64,000 nucleotides of DNA from Selaginella moellendorffii. Taxonomy: Eukaryota; Plantae; Lycopodiophyta. Where the stretch lies: assembly GCF_000143415.4 (NCBI RefSeq), contig NW_003314285.1:1933013-1997012 (forward strand). Reading direction: 5' to 3'. How positions within the stretch are numbered: position 1 is the first letter of the stretch; the number at the start of each line of letters is the position of its first letter. The notes beneath the pieces were generated by a model. It did not search any database. It was not told where the DNA came from and saw only the letters and a program-made list of their open reading frames with translations. The position numbers and the translations under genes were made by a program. This document shows, in pieces, positions 5,560-58,656 of this stretch.

Positions 5560-5830
5560 TTTGAAAAAGTCCACGAGAAGAACCTGGAGCATTCGCGCTG
5601 CCGCGCCTGCGATCTTGCTGGCATTGTCAGTGCCGCAGTGACGTCGTCAATTCTAGCGTCAATCCATTGACAGCGCAGTATGAATCATGGCCGAGGATAG
5701 AGCAATCGCGAATGACGCCGAGCGCATCGAACAAACAGGCAACAACAGGAACCAATCGCTGTGGACCGAGGTTGACGACTGGGCGATGGTCACAAGTCCA
5801 CCAACTGGGAAGTGAGCCGAGCAGTATATT
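5560..5830 (-). pseudogene. Decayed duplicate of the last exon of the Hog/Hint gene
   Basis: Fragments SVHSDWF, LFDALG and LGHDSY match the intact gene's ASVHSEWFLDALFDALG...LGHDSY; frameshifts and deletions present. Confidence 0.8.
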
Positions 5831-5916
5831 CCCTGTATTAGCCATATAGTGGTACTCTGAATGCTTCCTGTCACCGCGCATTACAAGCATTCAAATATTT
5901 AAAACACTCATAGGCA

Positions 5917-7635
5917 CTACGCGAAATTCCGGGTCTTTTTGGTCAATCGCAGGGACGCAATTCCACTCGCCAGCAGCGCCGCCGCTGCAATTTTGCCGCC
6001 ATTTTCAGTGCCGAACTCGGCGACATTGATCCTGGCGTCGATCCATTTGTAGAGCGCGAGGTATGAATCATGGCCGAGGAGTGTGTAGAGCAATCGCGCC
6101 GGGGAGAGGATAGCCTGGTATGCTGCTGGGAGGTAAACAGTGAGGCCGAGCGCGTCAAACAGGGCATCCAGGAACCACTCGCTGTGGACCGAGGCAGCGA
6201 CTCCATTGACGACGATAGTTCCTTGGAGAGTCAATGGATTATAGAGGCCGGGCTTTGTAACGATCGAGATTCGTGTGACTGGGAATGGAGTCATGATCGA
6301 ATTGTTGGTGGGGGATGAAGCGGTCAACACATCTCCGACAAGAACGTCTTGCGCACGCTTGAATTCGACTCCACCTAGAAATGGTTCGTGAGCTTGGTGG
6401 AAAAAAAAGTGGTGGAAGGAAGAGATGACACACACCAGCTTTGAGCAGCGTTGGCACGAAATGCAGGCGCGAGAGCTCAAGGGTCTTTGAGTGAGATAGT
6501 TCCAGGTTGACGAAGTCACTCTTCTGCTCCAAGTCTCGGTGGCCGAAAGCATAGATTTCACTGAACTCGAGCCTCCCGTTCTTGAGCGTCCCAACCTTCA
6601 CGACACGACCAGAGGAAAAAGGTTTAGTGGAAGCGATGGATGATCAGGATAAATACCTTGTCACCGATTTGGAGCTGGCTCATCATCTTTGTCTCGCCCG
6701 TGGAAGTTTGCACCGTTGCATCCCCAGGGAAGCACGCACTCACGCAGCCAGCAGCCGCGCCAAGCTGAGCACTCACTCCCAAAACTCCAACGACGCAGAA
6801 AGGTGCCAATGGTCCCAGTCCCAAGCAACCTCCAACTCCCAACACTCCGGTGATTGCACCTCCGATTGCTCCTGCAAAAAGGAAGGAACGAGCTCAACGA
6901 GAAGAACATATGGATCATCCCGAGGGACCTTTCCCTGCTTCTTCTTTGCAGTCACCAAGCAAGAATCTTCGAGCTGCTTGGTGATCGCCAGAAGAGTTTG
7001 TGAGTGAAAGATGCTGCTCGAGTTCCAAGCGCTTCTTGTAGAGCCTGTCCACGTCACTGCCGGTCATGTACACACCACAGCCGCTCTTCTTAGCGTTGTT
7101 TGGGCAAACGATCTGGTAAGCATTCAGTGATTTTTGTTATTGCAAGATGGTCTATGGAGCTCGCTAAAACTTACAGCACTCTTGCGGCCATAGTTGTCTG
7201 TGAACACGAACTGTGTCCCGGATGAATCTGGAGCAGCACCACAGCCACCGGTTGCGACCACCTGGAGATAGTTTCCAGTCGTGAGCATGAGAAAGATCAA
7301 AGAAACAAAGGTACTTGTGTCTTGTTCTTTACCTTTAGCTTGAGGTTCTCGGTTCCTCCCCAGTCGCCACTTACCTTAGCAGTGTACTGGAGCCTTCCAG
7401 TTTTGACAATCATCTGGCAGATCTTGGTGATTGCGCTCGCAGGAACCGAGCCCCAAAGCAATGCGGGAGTCTTCGATGCGAGAAGAGATGTCGCGATCTG
7501 ATCGCCAGTAGTTCCAATGAAGGTGTTTGGCTTGCCTTTGGTGATCTTGGGAGTCGTGGCTTTGAAACTCACGTCTTGCGCATTGCAAACGCTGGAGATC
7601 ACAGCAAGAACAAGAAGAAATGAGACACTTTTCAT
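5917..7635 (-). CDS. Secreted Hog-domain (Hedgehog-type Hint + sterol-recognition-like region) precursor, ~468 aa, with an unrecognised N-terminal domain and a Gly-zipper peptide
   Basis: Hand-spliced GT-AG exons 7635-7333, 7261-7175, 7112-6929, 6871-6657, 6595-6436, 6374-5917 give 1407 nt in one open frame (an alternative exon 1 donor at 7315 keeps the frame). Signal peptide MKSVSFLLVLAVISSVCNA. Hint motifs A|CFPGDATV, MSQLQIGDKV, FSEIYAFGHRD, LELSRLHFV, AQDVLVGDVL, GLYNPLTLQGTIVVNGVAASVHS. SRR-like AYQAILSPARLLY and a hydrophobic C-terminal tail. Confidence 0.88.
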
Positions 7636-8009: not shown

Positions 8010-8560
8010 TCGAAATTTGAAACTTTGGAAAAGCTACTTCCTTTGGAGCAGCACTGCCGCGGCCGCGATCTTGCCGCGCCTAAGTGGGAGAGGTTGATTC
8101 TAGCGTCGATCCATTTGTAGAGTGCGAGGTATGAGTCGTGGCCAAGAGAGGATCTCCCAGGAGCGCGTCAAACAGGGCATCCAAATCGCTGTAGACGGAC
8201 GATCACTGGATTGAAGTGAAGATTTTGGACGAAATGAAAGTGAGAGAGCTCGAGGCTGACGAAATGGCTTGTTTGATCCGAGTCTCGGTGCCCGAAAGCG
8301 TAAATATCACTAAAAATTAGCCTCAAAATACCCGCTCCTGTTGCTTCTAGGATCGAAGGCTTTTGCTCGAGGCTGTCGCAGGAAGAGGTAACATTTGAGA
8401 TCAAGTCATGAGACCTTGATCCATTTCTTCTTGTTCTTTTTTCCCGGGAGAGTTTGTGAGTGACGTTCACGTCACTGCTGGTCAAGGTACACGCTACAGC
8501 CAGTTCGTCCAGCGTTCCTCGAACAGAGAGACGAGCATAAAACTTCTTCCGGACCATATT
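8010..8560 (-). pseudogene. Internally deleted tandem copy of the Hog/Hint gene
   Basis: IFSDIYAFGHRDSDQTSHFVSLELSH matches the Hint exon; 8440-8505 matches exon 3 nucleotides (GGCTGT.G.GTGTAC...CAGTGACGTG, TCACTCACAAACTCT); 8040-8200 matches the last exon. Confidence 0.8.
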
Positions 8561-56340: not shown

Positions 56341-56573
56341 CTAACCATCATGCCTGTATCCTTGAGGGCAGACGTTTGCGCTTGCAGGAACCAAGCCCCA
56401 AAGCATTGCAGGAGTCTTTGATGCGAGAAGAGACGACGCGATCGGATCACCAATGGTTCCAATGAACGTGTTTGGCTTGTCTTTGGTGAGGCCGGGAGTC
56501 AGTGGCAAGTCTTGCGCATTGCAAATGTTGGAGATCATAGCAAGAACAAGAAAAAACAGTGAGGCTCTTTCAT
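56341..56573 (-). pseudogene. 5' fragment of a paralogue of the Hog/Hint precursor (exon 1), frameshifted signal peptide
   Basis: ISNICNAQD...TKDKPNTFIGTIGDPIASSLLASKTPAMLWGLVPASA vs ISSVCNAQD...TKGKPNTFIGTTGDQIATSLLASKTPALLWGSVPASA at 7440-7600. Confidence 0.88.
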
Positions 56574-58656
56574 TAAATTTCTTTTTCCAACTCTGAGCTT
56601 GTTTATCCTTATAAATGCTGTAAGTCCTTTCACAGTAGGCTTATCGAAAATAATAAAATTAATAAAGCTTATAAAAAGAGAGGAAAGAGCTAAGAATATA
56701 ACAAAAGAAAGTGAGATATACTTGAACATCTCGACTCTAGCTCCCGCTTATGAGAGAAGGCCTTTAAATCGATCTTTTCCATTTAAAGTTGAGGTATTGA
56801 TGTGTGACTGCAAGAAAAATTCAAGGTTTCATCCAGACACAAAGCTTTCGTGGTTGATTTAATTGACTACTATATTCGTTTCTTAGTATATTTCGAAAGT
56901 TTCTTAGTATATTCGAAATTTGTAAAACCCGCAAGAAGTTGCTGCCAATTGGCCCAGCTTCCCCAACACCTTCCAGTGAGCAGGTGCAACTTGTGGATTG
57001 CAATCGCTGGATGGAGCGCCTTGAAATTGCAGTGCCAAATTGGGGACATCCATCCATTTATAGAACGCAAGGTATGAAGAACAATAGTGTGGGGGATTAC
57101 TTGGTATGCTGCAGGAAGGTATATGCAGTGAGATCCAGGACAATTGTTGTGGACCAATTACTGTCCACTGAAATCAATAATATGGCATTTGAAAGCATAT
57201 TAGGAATAACTTTGAAAATAATTAAAACAAAGAAGTATACCTGAGTTATGTTTTTATTAAAAAAATAGATAAAGATAAAATTGATTTTAACTATTTAACA
57301 ATTGCTAAGGCATCTTCTTGGTGTCATATATTATGATAGTCATTCATAGTCTCAATAAATCCCACCTTTGACATGTATTTATTTAATTTTGAATTTATGT
57401 TGTATATGTCCAGTTTTACTAGAAACATATGTCAATATTGCAAAGATAATGAATGTGGCAAAGTTGTGGTTTGCAAGGTAGTGGAACTGAATTGTCCTTG
57501 CTGATCAGCTTGAAAATAAATATATAGAAAGAAAGCAATATAGTATAAGTTTTTGAATGAGCACTTCAATGCCATTTCAATGTTGTCAAGCCACCATATA
57601 TCCTATATGAGTAGAAAAATAATAAAAGCAACATAAATTTAATATAAATGAAGCCACCACTCATGGAACTTAAAAATATCATTTTGGAAAGGAATTAAGG
57701 GCCAACCAATAAAGTGGCAATGGTAAGATACTAGAGAAGGGATTTAAATGCATGCCCTTGTAAAACTTGAGTCAACCTACTTAGACCACTTAACTATCAT
57801 CTATTTCATAATTAATTTTTCTATGAACTTGGAGTCTAGAGATTGGTTATCAACCACTTAGCAATGCATATTAGAGCTTACATAAAGGCACTATTGACAG
57901 TAAAAAAACATTCTTCTTAAGAACCCTAAAAAAATGTTTTGATTAAAGTAATAGTAATATAAATGTAGTTGTCAAAATGTTTAAACTTGTTTCTTTTGAT
58001 TCATATTTGAATTTATTTTAATGAATTACATGAAAATCAAAATATAATAGTTGTAAAAGTAGTTCATAGTAAAACAATATAACTTTAGAAAAGATAGGTC
58101 TTTATGAACTTTGTCTTTTCTAAATAACTCAATTTAATAAAACTTTTGACTCAAGTACTTACATATTTCAATATTTTAAAGTTTATTAAAACTTTCATTT
58201 TTCAATTTAGATTTTTTTTATAAGACTTATGGTTAACTATATTGACTTGAGTTATCTTGTGCTATGTTGAGTTTAACTTATGAACTCAACTCAGCTTTGG
58301 ACCATTCCCTAAAAAAAAAAAAAGGAATTTTTTATACAACACTTGAAAGAAATAAGAATATAACAAAAAAAAGTGAGATATGCTTGAAGATCTCAACTTT
58401 GTAGCTCTGTAGCTCTTGCTTATGAGAGAAGGCTTTCAAATTGATCAATCTTGTCCATTTAAAGTATGAGCACATATGTGATGGCAAGAAAAATTCAAGG
58501 TTTCATCTAGACACAAGTTTTCATGGTTGATTTATATTATTTAGGAATAACTTTGAAAATAATAGCTGAGGTTTGTTATTATTAAAATTAATAAGTATAA
58601 AATTTAATCCTGAGTTATATTTTTATCAAAAGACAATTGCAATAAAAATAAAAGTT

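What the first reader, a model, noticed from the sequence alone, without database searches (positions are those of the whole stretch)
6735..6971. Bacteriocin-like 55-aa Gly-zipper peptide boxed between an RRFLL processing site and a Hedgehog-type Hint cysteine: candidate self-maturing peptide system
Seen: joining exon 3 (ends 6929) to exon 4 (starts 6871) gives ...AARRFLL|GDCKEEAGKGAIGGAITGVLGVGGCLGLGPLAPFCVVGVLGVSAQLGAAAGCVSA|CFPGDAT. No single ORF in the track shows this. The 55-mer is hydrophobic and GxxxG-rich, with Cys at 3, 25, 35 and 52. That spacing fits a helical hairpin (3-52, 25-35) around a GLGP turn, with the termini adjacent. Known: R-x-L-x/RRLL motifs are cut by the plant site-1 subtilase (SBT6.1/S1P); Hint domains form a thioester at the residue before Cys1; Blp/lactacin-F-like class II bacteriocins are Cys-flanked Gly-zipper hairpins. 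Inference: the precursor (signal peptide, pro-domain, RRFLL, peptide, Hog) releases a membrane-active peptide whose C-terminus is esterified to a sterol, cyclised onto the freed N-terminal Gly, or hydrolysed. I do not know of a described plant RiPP-like or defence pathway of this type.
Basis: partly seen in the sequence, partly recalled or inferred. Interest (0 to 1): 0.92.

Follow-up and report, generated by a model that had tools for sequence, protein, structure and literature searches.

The report
Conserved glycine-zipper hairpin in spikemoss Hog
The 55-residue glycine-rich stretch is real, spliced as described and expressed, but it is a conserved part of an already annotated and published plant Hedgehog-like (Hog) precursor family rather than a bacteriocin relative, and its release as a free, lipid-tagged peptide is a plausible but untested idea.

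Summary
A six-exon minus-strand gene (7635..5917) encodes a 468-aa secreted Hog protein. All five introns, including the 6929/6871 joint, are confirmed by RNA-seq, and the gene is well expressed. The protein is letter-for-letter NCBI LOC9658011 of Selaginella moellendorffii. Its family was listed by Bürglin in 2008 with a "conserved upstream region", so gene and family are known. The scan holds notes on other Hog genes of this genome, none at this locus.

What is new is the anatomy of the stretch. Relatives in lycophytes, ferns, mosses, a liverwort and green algae share:
- an R[RK]xL(L) motif at a fixed distance before the Hint cysteine, often doubled;
- four conserved cysteines with fixed spacing;
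- a GxxxGxxxG zipper.

The peptide is about as conserved as the Hint domain (40% against 47%), so it is not hypervariable. It matches no bacteriocin, glycine-zipper or other profile, and no stand-alone homologues were found. AlphaFold2 gives a moderate-confidence helical hairpin resembling Gly-rich membrane hairpins, with all Z under 8.

Best reading: a membrane-binding, probably disulfide-stapled hairpin at the cargo's C-terminus, flanked by a likely S1P-type site and the Hint cleavage site. One caveat is that Val replaces the Hedgehog residue C143. Cleavage, sterol transfer and any activity remain untested.

The parts
5917..7635 (-). Whole coding region of the Hog precursor gene (six exons, 468 aa, identical to NCBI LOC9658011 / P0155)
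   Evidence: Model from splice-site enumeration. All five introns are confirmed by RNA-seq joints. Identity to P0155 shown.
7576..7635 (-). Signal peptide, aa 1-20
   Evidence: N-terminal hydrophobic stretch. Homologues all begin with an equivalent hydrophobic leader. The cleavage site is inferred.
7008..7575 (-). Conserved N-terminal cargo domain, aa 21-165 (spans introns 1 and 2); alpha/beta fold with four conserved Cys
   Evidence: 48% mean pairwise identity among land-plant members. AF2 pLDDT is about 85-93. There is no Pfam, NCBIfam or Atlas hit, and fold matches are weak only, Z 4.1 or less.
6957..6971 (-). RRFLL, aa 178-182: conserved R[RK]xL(L) motif, candidate S1P/SBT6.1-type processing site
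   Evidence: 81% identity across the family. The motif lies 56-73 aa upstream of the Hint Cys in 11 of the 12 land-plant members scanned, about 100 times denser there than elsewhere, and is often doubled. It sits in a low-pLDDT linker. Motif class per PMC4983112 and bioRxiv 2022.07.28.501549.
6735..6956 (-). The 55-mer, aa 183-237 (interrupted by intron 3, 6872-6928): a Gly-zipper amphipathic helix, a GLGPLAPF turn and a hydrophobic helix, with Cys185, 207, 217 and 234
   Evidence: Four Cys are conserved with spacings C2-C3 of 10-11 and C3-C4 of 17. GxxxGxxxG is conserved. Hydropathy. AF2 helix pLDDT is about 77, matched to Gly-rich antiparallel hairpins.
6872..6928 (-). Intron 3 (57 nt, GT..AG), which hides the 55-mer from single-ORF reading
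   Evidence: Joint 6929/6871 seen in 191 and 481 raw RNA reads and in contigs of two other studies.
6169..6734 (-). Hedgehog-type Hint module, aa 238-385 (spans introns 4 and 5). Cys238 is the nucleophile, His282 sits at the D46 position, Ser305..His308 is the TxxH equivalent, and Val379 sits at the C143 position.
   Evidence: Pfam PF01079 at 108 bits against a cut-off of 29.7. Residue mapping on Drosophila Hh-C 1AT0/6TD6/6TYY. AF2 pLDDT above 90.
6004..6168 (-). SRR/ARR-like helical region after the Hint module, aa 386-440
   Evidence: 47% family identity. AF2 predicts helices 386-432. Bürglin motifs J/K are reported for moss Hogs.
5920..6003 (-). C-terminal tail, aa 441-468: a hydrophobic stretch followed by basic residues. 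It is TM-like in most homologues and a likely membrane anchor of the Hog part.
   Evidence: Best 19-aa hydropathy is 1.25 here and 1.5-2.3 in most homologues. The sequence is variable (19% identity).

Best explanation
The 55-mer is a conserved module of a known green-lineage Hog precursor family, seen here in green algae, bryophytes, lycophytes and ferns. It consists of an amphipathic GxxxGxxxG helix and a hydrophobic helix joined by a GP..P turn. Four conserved cysteines probably staple it (C185-C234 and C207-C217). It forms the C-terminal end of the Hog cargo.

Proposed mechanism:
1. The precursor enters the ER through its signal peptide.
2. The Hint domain performs an N-to-S acyl shift at Ala237|Cys238 and releases the cargo. 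By analogy with Hedgehog, Ala237 is transferred to a membrane sterol; otherwise the bond is hydrolysed.
3. The hairpin, with or without sterol, holds the cargo end on the lumenal or outer membrane face.
4. A Golgi S1P/SBT6.1-type subtilase cuts after RRFLL in the flexible linker. This separates the equally conserved N-domain from a 55-aa, possibly lipidated, membrane-bound hairpin.

Shown: gene structure, expression, family-wide conservation of motif, Cys and Gly zipper, and presence of a Hint domain with Cys1, His at the D46 position and SxxH.

Inferred: hairpin fold and disulfides, both cleavages, sterol transfer and membrane binding.

The module is not a homologue of bacterial bacteriocins.
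For: - RNA-seq confirms all splice joints and strong expression.
- The protein is identical to annotated P0155.
- The family spans Selaginella, Diphasiastrum, Adiantum, Ceratodon, Physcomitrium, Marchantia, Coccomyxa and Myrmecia.
- Region identities among land-plant members: N-domain 48%, RRxLL 81%, peptide 40%, Hint 47%, linker 21%.
- R[RK]xL lies 56-73 aa before the Hint Cys in 11 of the 12 land-plant members scanned, about 100 times denser there than elsewhere. The Physcomitrium entry was not scored by the script but shows the motif in the alignment.
- The motif class matches SBT6.1 sites and the RKLL/RRLL motifs of pro-PMEs, which can also be doubled.
- The motif lies in a linker with pLDDT under 50.
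- Cys spacing and GxxxGxxxG are conserved.
- Helix 1 is amphipathic and often charged, and helix 2 is hydrophobic.
- The AF2 N-part model gives pLDDT of about 77 for the segment. It aligns to antiparallel Gly-rich hairpins: Mgr2 in TIM23 at Z 7.2, SlyB at Z 6.1 (rmsd 3.4, 23% identity) and Wzz TM1+TM2 at rmsd 3.0-3.4.
- Pfam Hint scores 108 bits. Cys1, His at the D46 position and SxxH map onto Drosophila Hh-C, and D46H Hedgehog is active (PMC12054796).
Against: - The residue at the Hedgehog C143 position is Val379, and C143 is reported as absolutely required for animal Hh autoprocessing. Plant Hogs as a group lack it. Invariant Ser378, His380 and Ser381 lie next to it, but their role is unknown.
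- In the full-length AF2 model the peptide has pLDDT under 50.
- DSSP prints one unbroken helix for the segment. The hairpin is inferred only from the fold matches, because model coordinates could not be inspected. All those matches have Z under 8, which the tool warns may reflect only a common arrangement.
- There is no proteomic or biochemical evidence for either cleavage or for sterol addition. Two proteome supplements searched gave nothing.
- The N-domain/peptide complex prediction gave no answer.
- Other plant Hog proteins have no hydrophobic segment before the Hint Cys (P0015, P0020, P0022). The hairpin is therefore not needed for Hog processing as such.
Confidence: 0.5

Rival explanations
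1. The hairpin is a retained anchor. It is simply the membrane-embedded or membrane-dipping tail of the N-domain cargo, a two-helix hairpin with both ends on the lumenal side. RRxLL is a structural or sorting motif that is not cleaved, or is cleaved only to shed the N-domain. In this reading no independent peptide has a function.
For: - The best structural look-alikes are all membrane hairpins.
- The best 19-aa hydropathy is 1.6-2.3 across the family.
- The N-domain is the most conserved cargo part, so it is probably the business end.
- Known S1P substrates such as the plant bZIP17/28 factors are membrane proteins cut at lumenal juxtamembrane sites (general knowledge, not tested here).
Against: - Helix 1 has low mean hydropathy (0.07-1.6) and up to four charged residues in many members, which is poor for a true TM span.
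- The four conserved Cys fit a lumenal disulfide-stapled hairpin better.
- The linker motif is the single most conserved short element (81%), which is hard to explain without a function such as cleavage.
Confidence: 0.25
2. The 55-mer is a bacteriocin-like (Blp/lactacin-F type), membrane-permeabilising defence peptide released by S1P plus Hint. It may be head-to-tail cyclised or sterol-esterified, which would make it a new plant RiPP-like defence pathway.
For: The Gly-zipper, Cys-flanked hairpin composition is conserved. Conserved candidate cleavage sites flank it on both sides. Expression is strong.
Against: - No profile match to any bacteriocin or glycine-zipper family in Pfam or NCBIfam, or to any PDB sequence, up to E=10. 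Only sub-threshold holin-like compositional hits appeared.
- The peptide is conserved, not hypervariable.
- No stand-alone copies were found.
- The residue after the motif varies (G, A, S), and the order of ER and Golgi events disfavours cyclisation (inference).
- No Asn/Asp-type cyclisation site is present.
Confidence: 0.08
3. The Hint domain of this family no longer self-cleaves, because the C143-equivalent is missing. The protein stays whole as a type I membrane protein, and the Gly/Cys segment is a structural linker between two folded domains.
For: Val379 sits at the C143 position, and C143A/D abolish animal Hh processing. The Hog part ends in a TM-like tail in most homologues.
Against: Cys1, His282 (D46H is active) and SxxH are conserved, and the Hint core is under clear purifying selection (47% identity, with invariant CF.G, GH.D and HS.WF motifs). 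The absence of C143 is general in moss and red-algal Hogs, which otherwise retain all the motifs.
Confidence: 0.15

Closest known systems
Plant/'moss' Hog proteins of Bürglin 2008 (pPp Hog, JGI 232119; pSl Hog, EST EH093067), BMC Genomics 9:127, PMC2362128
   Same: This is the same family. The Physcomitrella entry has the signal peptide, N-domain, doubled RRxLL, the 4-Cys Gly-rich stretch and CFPGDATV. The S. lepidophylla EST is the orthologue of this gene up to the first helix. The paper notes a 'conserved upstream region not found in other organisms'.
   Different: The paper gives no dissection of the upstream region, so no motif, Cys pattern, hairpin or processing model. Its S. moellendorffii entry (pSm Hog) is a different, short Hog gene.
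Animal Hedgehog precursor (Hh-N / Hh-C, cholesterolysis)
   Same: Secreted cargo fused to a Hint domain plus a sterol-recognition-like region. Cys1 lies in a CF(P/T)G motif and a (T/S)xxH motif is present. Cleavage is expected exactly before Cys1, with possible sterol esterification of the last cargo residue.
   Different: The cargo is unrelated to the Hedge domain. The residue before Cys is Ala, not Gly. His replaces Asp46 and Val replaces Cys143. The Hog part ends in a TM-like tail. The cargo carries its own hydrophobic hairpin and an internal dibasic-Leu-Leu site.
SBT6.1/S1P substrates in plants (pro-PMEs with RKLL/RRLL, RALF23, GLV1; RXXL/RXLX sites)
   Same: An R[RK]xL(L) motif, often doubled as in PME3, lies in an exposed linker of a secretory precursor between a pro-region and a downstream product.
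   Different: No cleavage has been shown for any Hog protein, and the downstream product here is a hydrophobic hairpin followed by a self-cleaving domain.
Glycine-zipper membrane hairpins (E. coli SlyB; Mgr2/Romo1 and the Tim17 family)
   Same: Two antiparallel Gly-rich helices with small-xxx-small packing. These are the best structural matches of the model: Z 6.1-7.2, with SlyB at 23% identity over 53 residues.
   Different: No profile-level homology. Those proteins lack the four cysteines. Z under 8 may reflect only a common helical arrangement. Their biological context is entirely different.
Class II bacteriocins with GxxxG motifs (lactacin F / Blp type)
   Same: A small, Gly-rich, hydrophobic, helix-forming peptide released from a precursor. 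This is a resemblance of composition only.
   Different: No sequence or profile match. The precursor is a eukaryotic Sec-type one, without a double-glycine leader or ABC exporter. The peptide is conserved over roughly 400 million years (general knowledge) rather than diversified.

Membership tests
Hog proteins (Hedgehog-type Hint + SRR) | Pfam Hint module PF01079 above the gathering score | tested here: met
   108.3 bits against a cut-off of 29.7 on P0155, residues 232-382. Exon-wise hits.
Hog proteins (Hedgehog-type Hint + SRR) | Nucleophilic Cys1 at the cargo/Hint junction | tested here: met
   Cys238 aligns with Cys258 (C1) of Drosophila Hh. It is invariant in the family.
Hog proteins (Hedgehog-type Hint + SRR) | General base at position D46 | tested here: inconclusive
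   His282 occupies the position, and the best PDB hit is the D46H mutant 6TYY. D46H Hh autoprocesses in cells (PMC12054796). Function in this protein is untested.
Hog proteins (Hedgehog-type Hint + SRR) | TxxH motif (T69, H72) | tested here: met
   Ser305-x-x-His308 here (conservative Thr to Ser). The family consensus is TxxH.
Hog proteins (Hedgehog-type Hint + SRR) | Cys143 (branched-intermediate cysteine of animal Hh) | tested here: not met
   Val379 aligns with C143. The loss is general in moss and red-algal Hogs. Its importance in animals is shown.
Hog proteins (Hedgehog-type Hint + SRR) | Autocleavage with sterol transfer | not testable with these tools
   Needs biochemistry. An SRR-like helical region is present and conserved.
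Class II bacteriocins (Blp / lactacin F / bacteriocin IIc) | Sequence-profile match to a bacteriocin family | tested here: not met
   No such family appears in Pfam or NCBIfam at E up to 10 for the 65-mer or its homologues. A profile of 14 homologues finds no PDB sequence at E up to 10.
Class II bacteriocins (Blp / lactacin F / bacteriocin IIc) | Double-glycine leader directly before the mature peptide | tested here: not met
   The peptide is preceded by RRFLL, 160 aa into a Sec-type eukaryotic precursor.
Glycine-zipper families (Gly-zipper 2TM / SlyB-like) | Conserved GxxxGxxxG motif in a helix | tested here: met
   Gly192, 196 and 200 are invariant or nearly invariant in 14 homologues. The motif is present in the land-plant members examined.
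Glycine-zipper families (Gly-zipper 2TM / SlyB-like) | Profile match or clear fold match | tested here: inconclusive
   No Pfam match. SlyB gives Z 6.1, rmsd 3.4 and 23% identity over 53 residues, below the level the tool regards as specific.
S1P/SBT6.1 substrates | RXXL/RXLX site in an exposed lumenal segment | tested here: met
   RRFLL lies in a linker with pLDDT under 50. Its position is conserved in 11 of the 12 land-plant members scanned. Motif definition.
S1P/SBT6.1 substrates | Cleavage by the protease | not testable with these tools
   No proteomic evidence was found.
Plant head-to-tail cyclic peptides (cyclotide/orbitide type) | Asn/Asp at the C-terminal processing site for asparaginyl endopeptidase | tested here: not met
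   The C-terminal residue is Ala237, and it varies in the family among A, S, G, N, T and V. The requirement itself is general knowledge.

The most novel reading that the evidence does not exclude
Non-seed plants and some green algae use a two-step route: Hint autoprocessing at the C-terminus and S1P-type cleavage at a conserved RRxLL site at the N-terminus. The product would be a roughly 55-aa disulfide-stapled glycine-zipper hairpin whose C-terminus is esterified to a phytosterol. That would be a previously undescribed class of lipidated, membrane-resident peptide, either signal or membrane effector, and the first sterylated protein product outside animals.
Probability: 0.25. Interest if true: 0.8.

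Novelty: new variant of a known kind. Interest (0 to 1): 0.45.

Why it matters
Hog proteins have been known in plants and protists since 2008, yet none has a known function and sterol transfer has never been shown outside animals. This family offers a concrete, well-expressed and conserved test case. It has a defined scissile bond (Ala237|Cys238), a defined candidate second site (after Leu182) and a small predicted product of calculable mass. That makes two questions directly answerable by mass spectrometry in Physcomitrium, Marchantia or Selaginella: do plants sterylate proteins, and what is the Hog cargo for? If the hairpin is only a membrane tail, the result still explains a conserved upstream region that has gone unexplained for 18 years.

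Tried and rejected
- **Complex prediction.** N-domain (21-170) against the 55-mer gave a score of 0.01, verdict 'no answer'. This is not evidence either way.
- **ESM Atlas.** A feature search with the N-domain gave no usable hit.
- **Fold searches of the N-part model.** Foldseek against PDB found nothing at E of 0.001 or better; the weak rows were SRPBCC/Bet v 1-like, profilin-like and the profragilysin pro-domain. The VIA second look gave Z of 4.1 or less for the N-domain. Atlas gave TM of 0.37 or less by query. The N-domain fold stays unassigned.
- **Profile searches with the peptide.** There were no PDB sequences and no stand-alone proteins of 36-108 aa among 5.8 billion. The latter search is word-based, so a blank is weak evidence.
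- **Pfam and NCBIfam on the peptide.** Only sub-threshold holin-like (E 0.05-0.14) and 'smalltalk' (E 3.2) hits appeared, and I read them as compositional.
- **Proteomic evidence.** The supplements of a Physcomitrella N-terminome and a Marchantia cell-wall proteome had no hits.
- **General requirement for Hog processing.** I considered a hydrophobic pre-Hint segment as a general requirement and rejected it for plants, because other plant Hogs lack it.
- **Classical two-span TM hairpin.** I judged this less likely because helix 1 is weakly hydrophobic and often charged.
- **Limitation.** DSSP prints an unbroken helix, whereas the fold matches require two antiparallel helices.
Full report
**1. 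Observation**

On the minus strand, enumerating GT/AG sites gives a single open reading model. It has six exons (7635-7333, 7261-7175, 7112-6929, 6871-6657, 6595-6436, 6374-5917) and encodes 468 aa.

Joining 6929 to 6871 removes a 57-nt intron. No single ORF contains the junction.

Two RNA-seq runs kept as raw reads and contigs from two further studies confirm all five introns. The 6929/6871 joint is seen in 191 and 481 reads. Depth is in the hundreds, and the read orientation fits a minus-strand mRNA.

**2. Identity**

Pfam finds the Hedgehog-type Hint module in exons 4-6 and in the whole protein, at 108 bits against a cut-off of 29.7.

An exhaustive HMMER search with exon 6 returned 578 relatives. 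A second, word-based search with an alignment of the full-length ones returned P0155, which is identical to my spliced model. NCBI names it 'uncharacterized protein LOC9658011 [Selaginella moellendorffii]'. The gene is therefore already annotated with this same exon structure.

Named full-length relatives come from the following organisms:
- Diphasiastrum
- Adiantum (two species, two paralogues)
- Ceratodon (two paralogues)
- Physcomitrium
- Marchantia paleacea
- the green algae Coccomyxa and Myrmecia

No seed-plant member appeared.

Bürglin 2008 (PMC2362128) already lists the Physcomitrella member in full. It also lists a Selaginella lepidophylla EST that is the orthologue of this gene up to the first helix of the 55-mer. 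[quoted passage not shown] It offers no dissection or function. Earlier notes of this scan pointed me to that paper. They concern other Hog genes of this genome, not this locus.

**3. Anatomy and conservation**

In a MAFFT alignment of 19 family members and tool alignments, every land-plant member has the same layout:
- a signal peptide;
- a roughly 145-aa N-domain with four conserved Cys;
- a variable linker;
- an R[RK]xL(L) motif, often followed 6-10 residues later by a second one;
- a 55-66-aa Gly/Ala-rich stretch with four Cys;
- the Hint Cys.

Mean pairwise identity among nine land-plant members:

| Region | Identity |
|---|---|
| N-domain | 48% |
| Linker | 21% |
| RRxLL motif | 81% |
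| Peptide | 40% (67% Selaginella to Adiantum) |
| Hint | 47% |
| SRR-like region | 47% |
| C-terminal tail | 19% |

R[RK]xL occurs 56-73 residues before the Hint Cys in 11 of the 12 land-plant members scanned and almost nowhere else in these proteins. The density is 0.0225 against 0.0002 per residue. The Physcomitrium entry was not scored by the script but shows the motif in the alignment.

Cys spacing is C2-C3 of 10-11 and C3-C4 of 17 in most members. A GxxxGxxxG motif (Gly192, 196, 200) is invariant or nearly so.

The stretch between C1 and C2 has low mean hydropathy (0.07-1.6) and often carries charged residues. The stretch from just before C3 to C4 is hydrophobic (1.1-1.8 among the land-plant members).

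The peptide is thus a constrained module, not a hypervariable insert.

**4. Structure**

The full-length AF2 model has a confident Hint domain (pLDDT above 90), but pLDDT is under 50 for residues 165-235.

A model of residues 21-242 gives pLDDT of about 85-93 for the N-domain, under 50 around residues 174-178 (just before RRFLL) and about 77 for a helical segment covering residues 183-238.

A Foldseek-independent search of 48,161 PDB representatives matched that segment to antiparallel Gly-rich membrane hairpins:
- a small subunit of the yeast TIM23 complex, which I take to be Mgr2 (Z 7.2);
- Tim17-family and complex I subunits;
- E. coli SlyB (Z 6.1, rmsd 3.4 Å, 23% identity over 53 residues);
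- TM1 plus TM2 of Wzz co-polymerases (rmsd 3.0-3.4 Å).

Because these alignments span two separate antiparallel helices in the targets, the modelled segment must be a hairpin. However, DSSP prints one unbroken helix and I could not inspect coordinates. All Z values are below the level the tool regards as specific.

With a turn at GLGP, Cys207 and Cys217 lie symmetrically about it, and Cys185 and Cys234 lie near the open end.

The N-domain has no convincing structural or sequence relative.

**5. Hint catalytic residues**

Aligned to Drosophila Hh-C:
- Cys238 corresponds to C1.
- His282 occupies the D46 general-base position. The best PDB hit is in fact the D46H mutant.
- Ser305..His308 corresponds to TxxH.
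- Val379 occupies the C143 position.

D46H Hedgehog autoprocesses in cells, whereas C143A/D do not, and C143 is described as absolutely required (PMC12054796). Plant and red-algal Hogs generally lack this cysteine. Ser378, His380 and Ser381 around it are invariant in this family.

Self-cleavage is therefore likely from the strong conservation of the other catalytic positions, but it is not assured.

**6. What the peptide is not**

Pfam and NCBIfam scans of the 65-mer and of homologous segments up to E=10 show no bacteriocin, Gly-zipper or other family. Only sub-threshold holin-like hits appear. A profile of 14 homologues finds no PDB sequence and no stand-alone small protein.

Membership in the Blp, lactacin-F or bacteriocin IIc families is therefore not supported. 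The likeness is compositional.

**7. Mechanism proposed**

Established knowledge is that Hint domains convert the peptide bond before Cys1 into a thioester, which a nucleophile then resolves. In Hedgehog that nucleophile is cholesterol, positioned by the SRR.

SBT6.1/S1P recognises RXXL/RXLX sites (PMC4983112). Pro-PMEs carry RKLL, RRLL or RRKL processing motifs, sometimes two of them (bioRxiv 2022.07.28.501549).

Putting this together with the anatomy, I propose that the precursor is cut at Ala237|Cys238 by its own Hint domain, possibly with sterol esterification. It is then cut after Leu182 by an S1P-type subtilase in the exposed linker. The products would be a soluble N-domain, a 55-aa stapled hairpin that binds membrane (with or without sterol), and a Hog remnant that carries a TM-like tail in most homologues.

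I put this at about 0.5. Which of the two cargo parts is the functional product is open, since both are conserved. The rivals are:
- a retained anchor with no separate peptide (0.25);
- an inactive Hint domain (0.15);

**8. Novelty and score**

The gene and family are known, annotated and published. The conserved RRxLL site, the four-Cys/Gly-zipper hairpin and the dual-processing model are, as far as my literature searches show, not described.

I rate it a new variant of a known kind and of moderate interest (0.45). It turns a long-standing blank, the function of plant Hog proteins and whether protein sterylation exists outside animals, into a specific mass-spectrometry experiment. Nothing beyond sequence conservation supports the exciting part.

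Noticed in passing
window 8078-8353 (-) and 5599-5799 (-): Degenerate fragments of a Hog C-terminal half flank the gene on the same strand. Upstream they are 55-83% identical to aa 271-315 and 416-438. Downstream the match is about 31% to aa 368-449. RNA depth there is near zero, so they look like relics of tandem duplication.
   Followed up: partly
window 56374-56556 (-), with small bits at 57048-57124 (-): An isolated exon-1-like piece is 71-77% identical to the N-terminus of this protein and of its paralogue P0001, with tiny C-terminal-like bits just upstream. It is probably another broken copy.
   Followed up: no
window 5900-7300 (reads of X23/X24): Most RNA reads are 95-99% rather than 99%+ identical and carry a consistent set of differences. 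These include conservative changes in the peptide (V204, V218, V219) and a replaced 30-nt stretch at 7082-7175. A near-identical allele or paralogue is therefore expressed too, in some runs more strongly than this copy.
   Followed up: partly
window 6396-6435 and 6596-6656 (introns 5 and 4): About 22-28 reads with the opposite mate orientation cover these introns, all with variant letters. This suggests a low-level antisense or unspliced transcript from the divergent copy.
   Followed up: no
P0001 (SELMODRAFT_421866, elsewhere in the genome): The closest paralogue's annotated 349-aa model skips the end of the hairpin and the start of the Hint domain, and has Tyr where Cys207 (C2) stands. It is either a mis-annotation or a decaying copy.
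   Followed up: no
P0046, P0056, P0061, P0066, P0075, P0086, P0087, P0097, P0105, P0132 (metagenomic Hog proteins): A different, non-plant group of Hog proteins also carries a hydrophobic multi-Cys stretch directly before the Hint Cys (of the type LPCLP...SFFxCMxxC...). Hydrophobic Cys-rich segments next to the Hint cleavage site may be a recurrent theme in protist Hogs.
   Followed up: no
P0015, P0020, P0022, P0007 (other plant Hog proteins): Plant Hog domains are fused to quite different cargos: a Pro-rich repeat (named 'warthog protein 4' at NCBI), a hevein-like Cys/Gly-rich domain (my reading, not tested), a small 4-Cys peptide and a large Cys-rich domain. None has the hairpin.
   Followed up: no
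P0152 (Physcomitrium patens UniRef entry, 571 aa): Compared with Bürglin's corrected pPp Hog, the database model seems to read through two introns, one placed right after CFPG. The public model of the moss orthologue is thus probably wrong.
   Followed up: no
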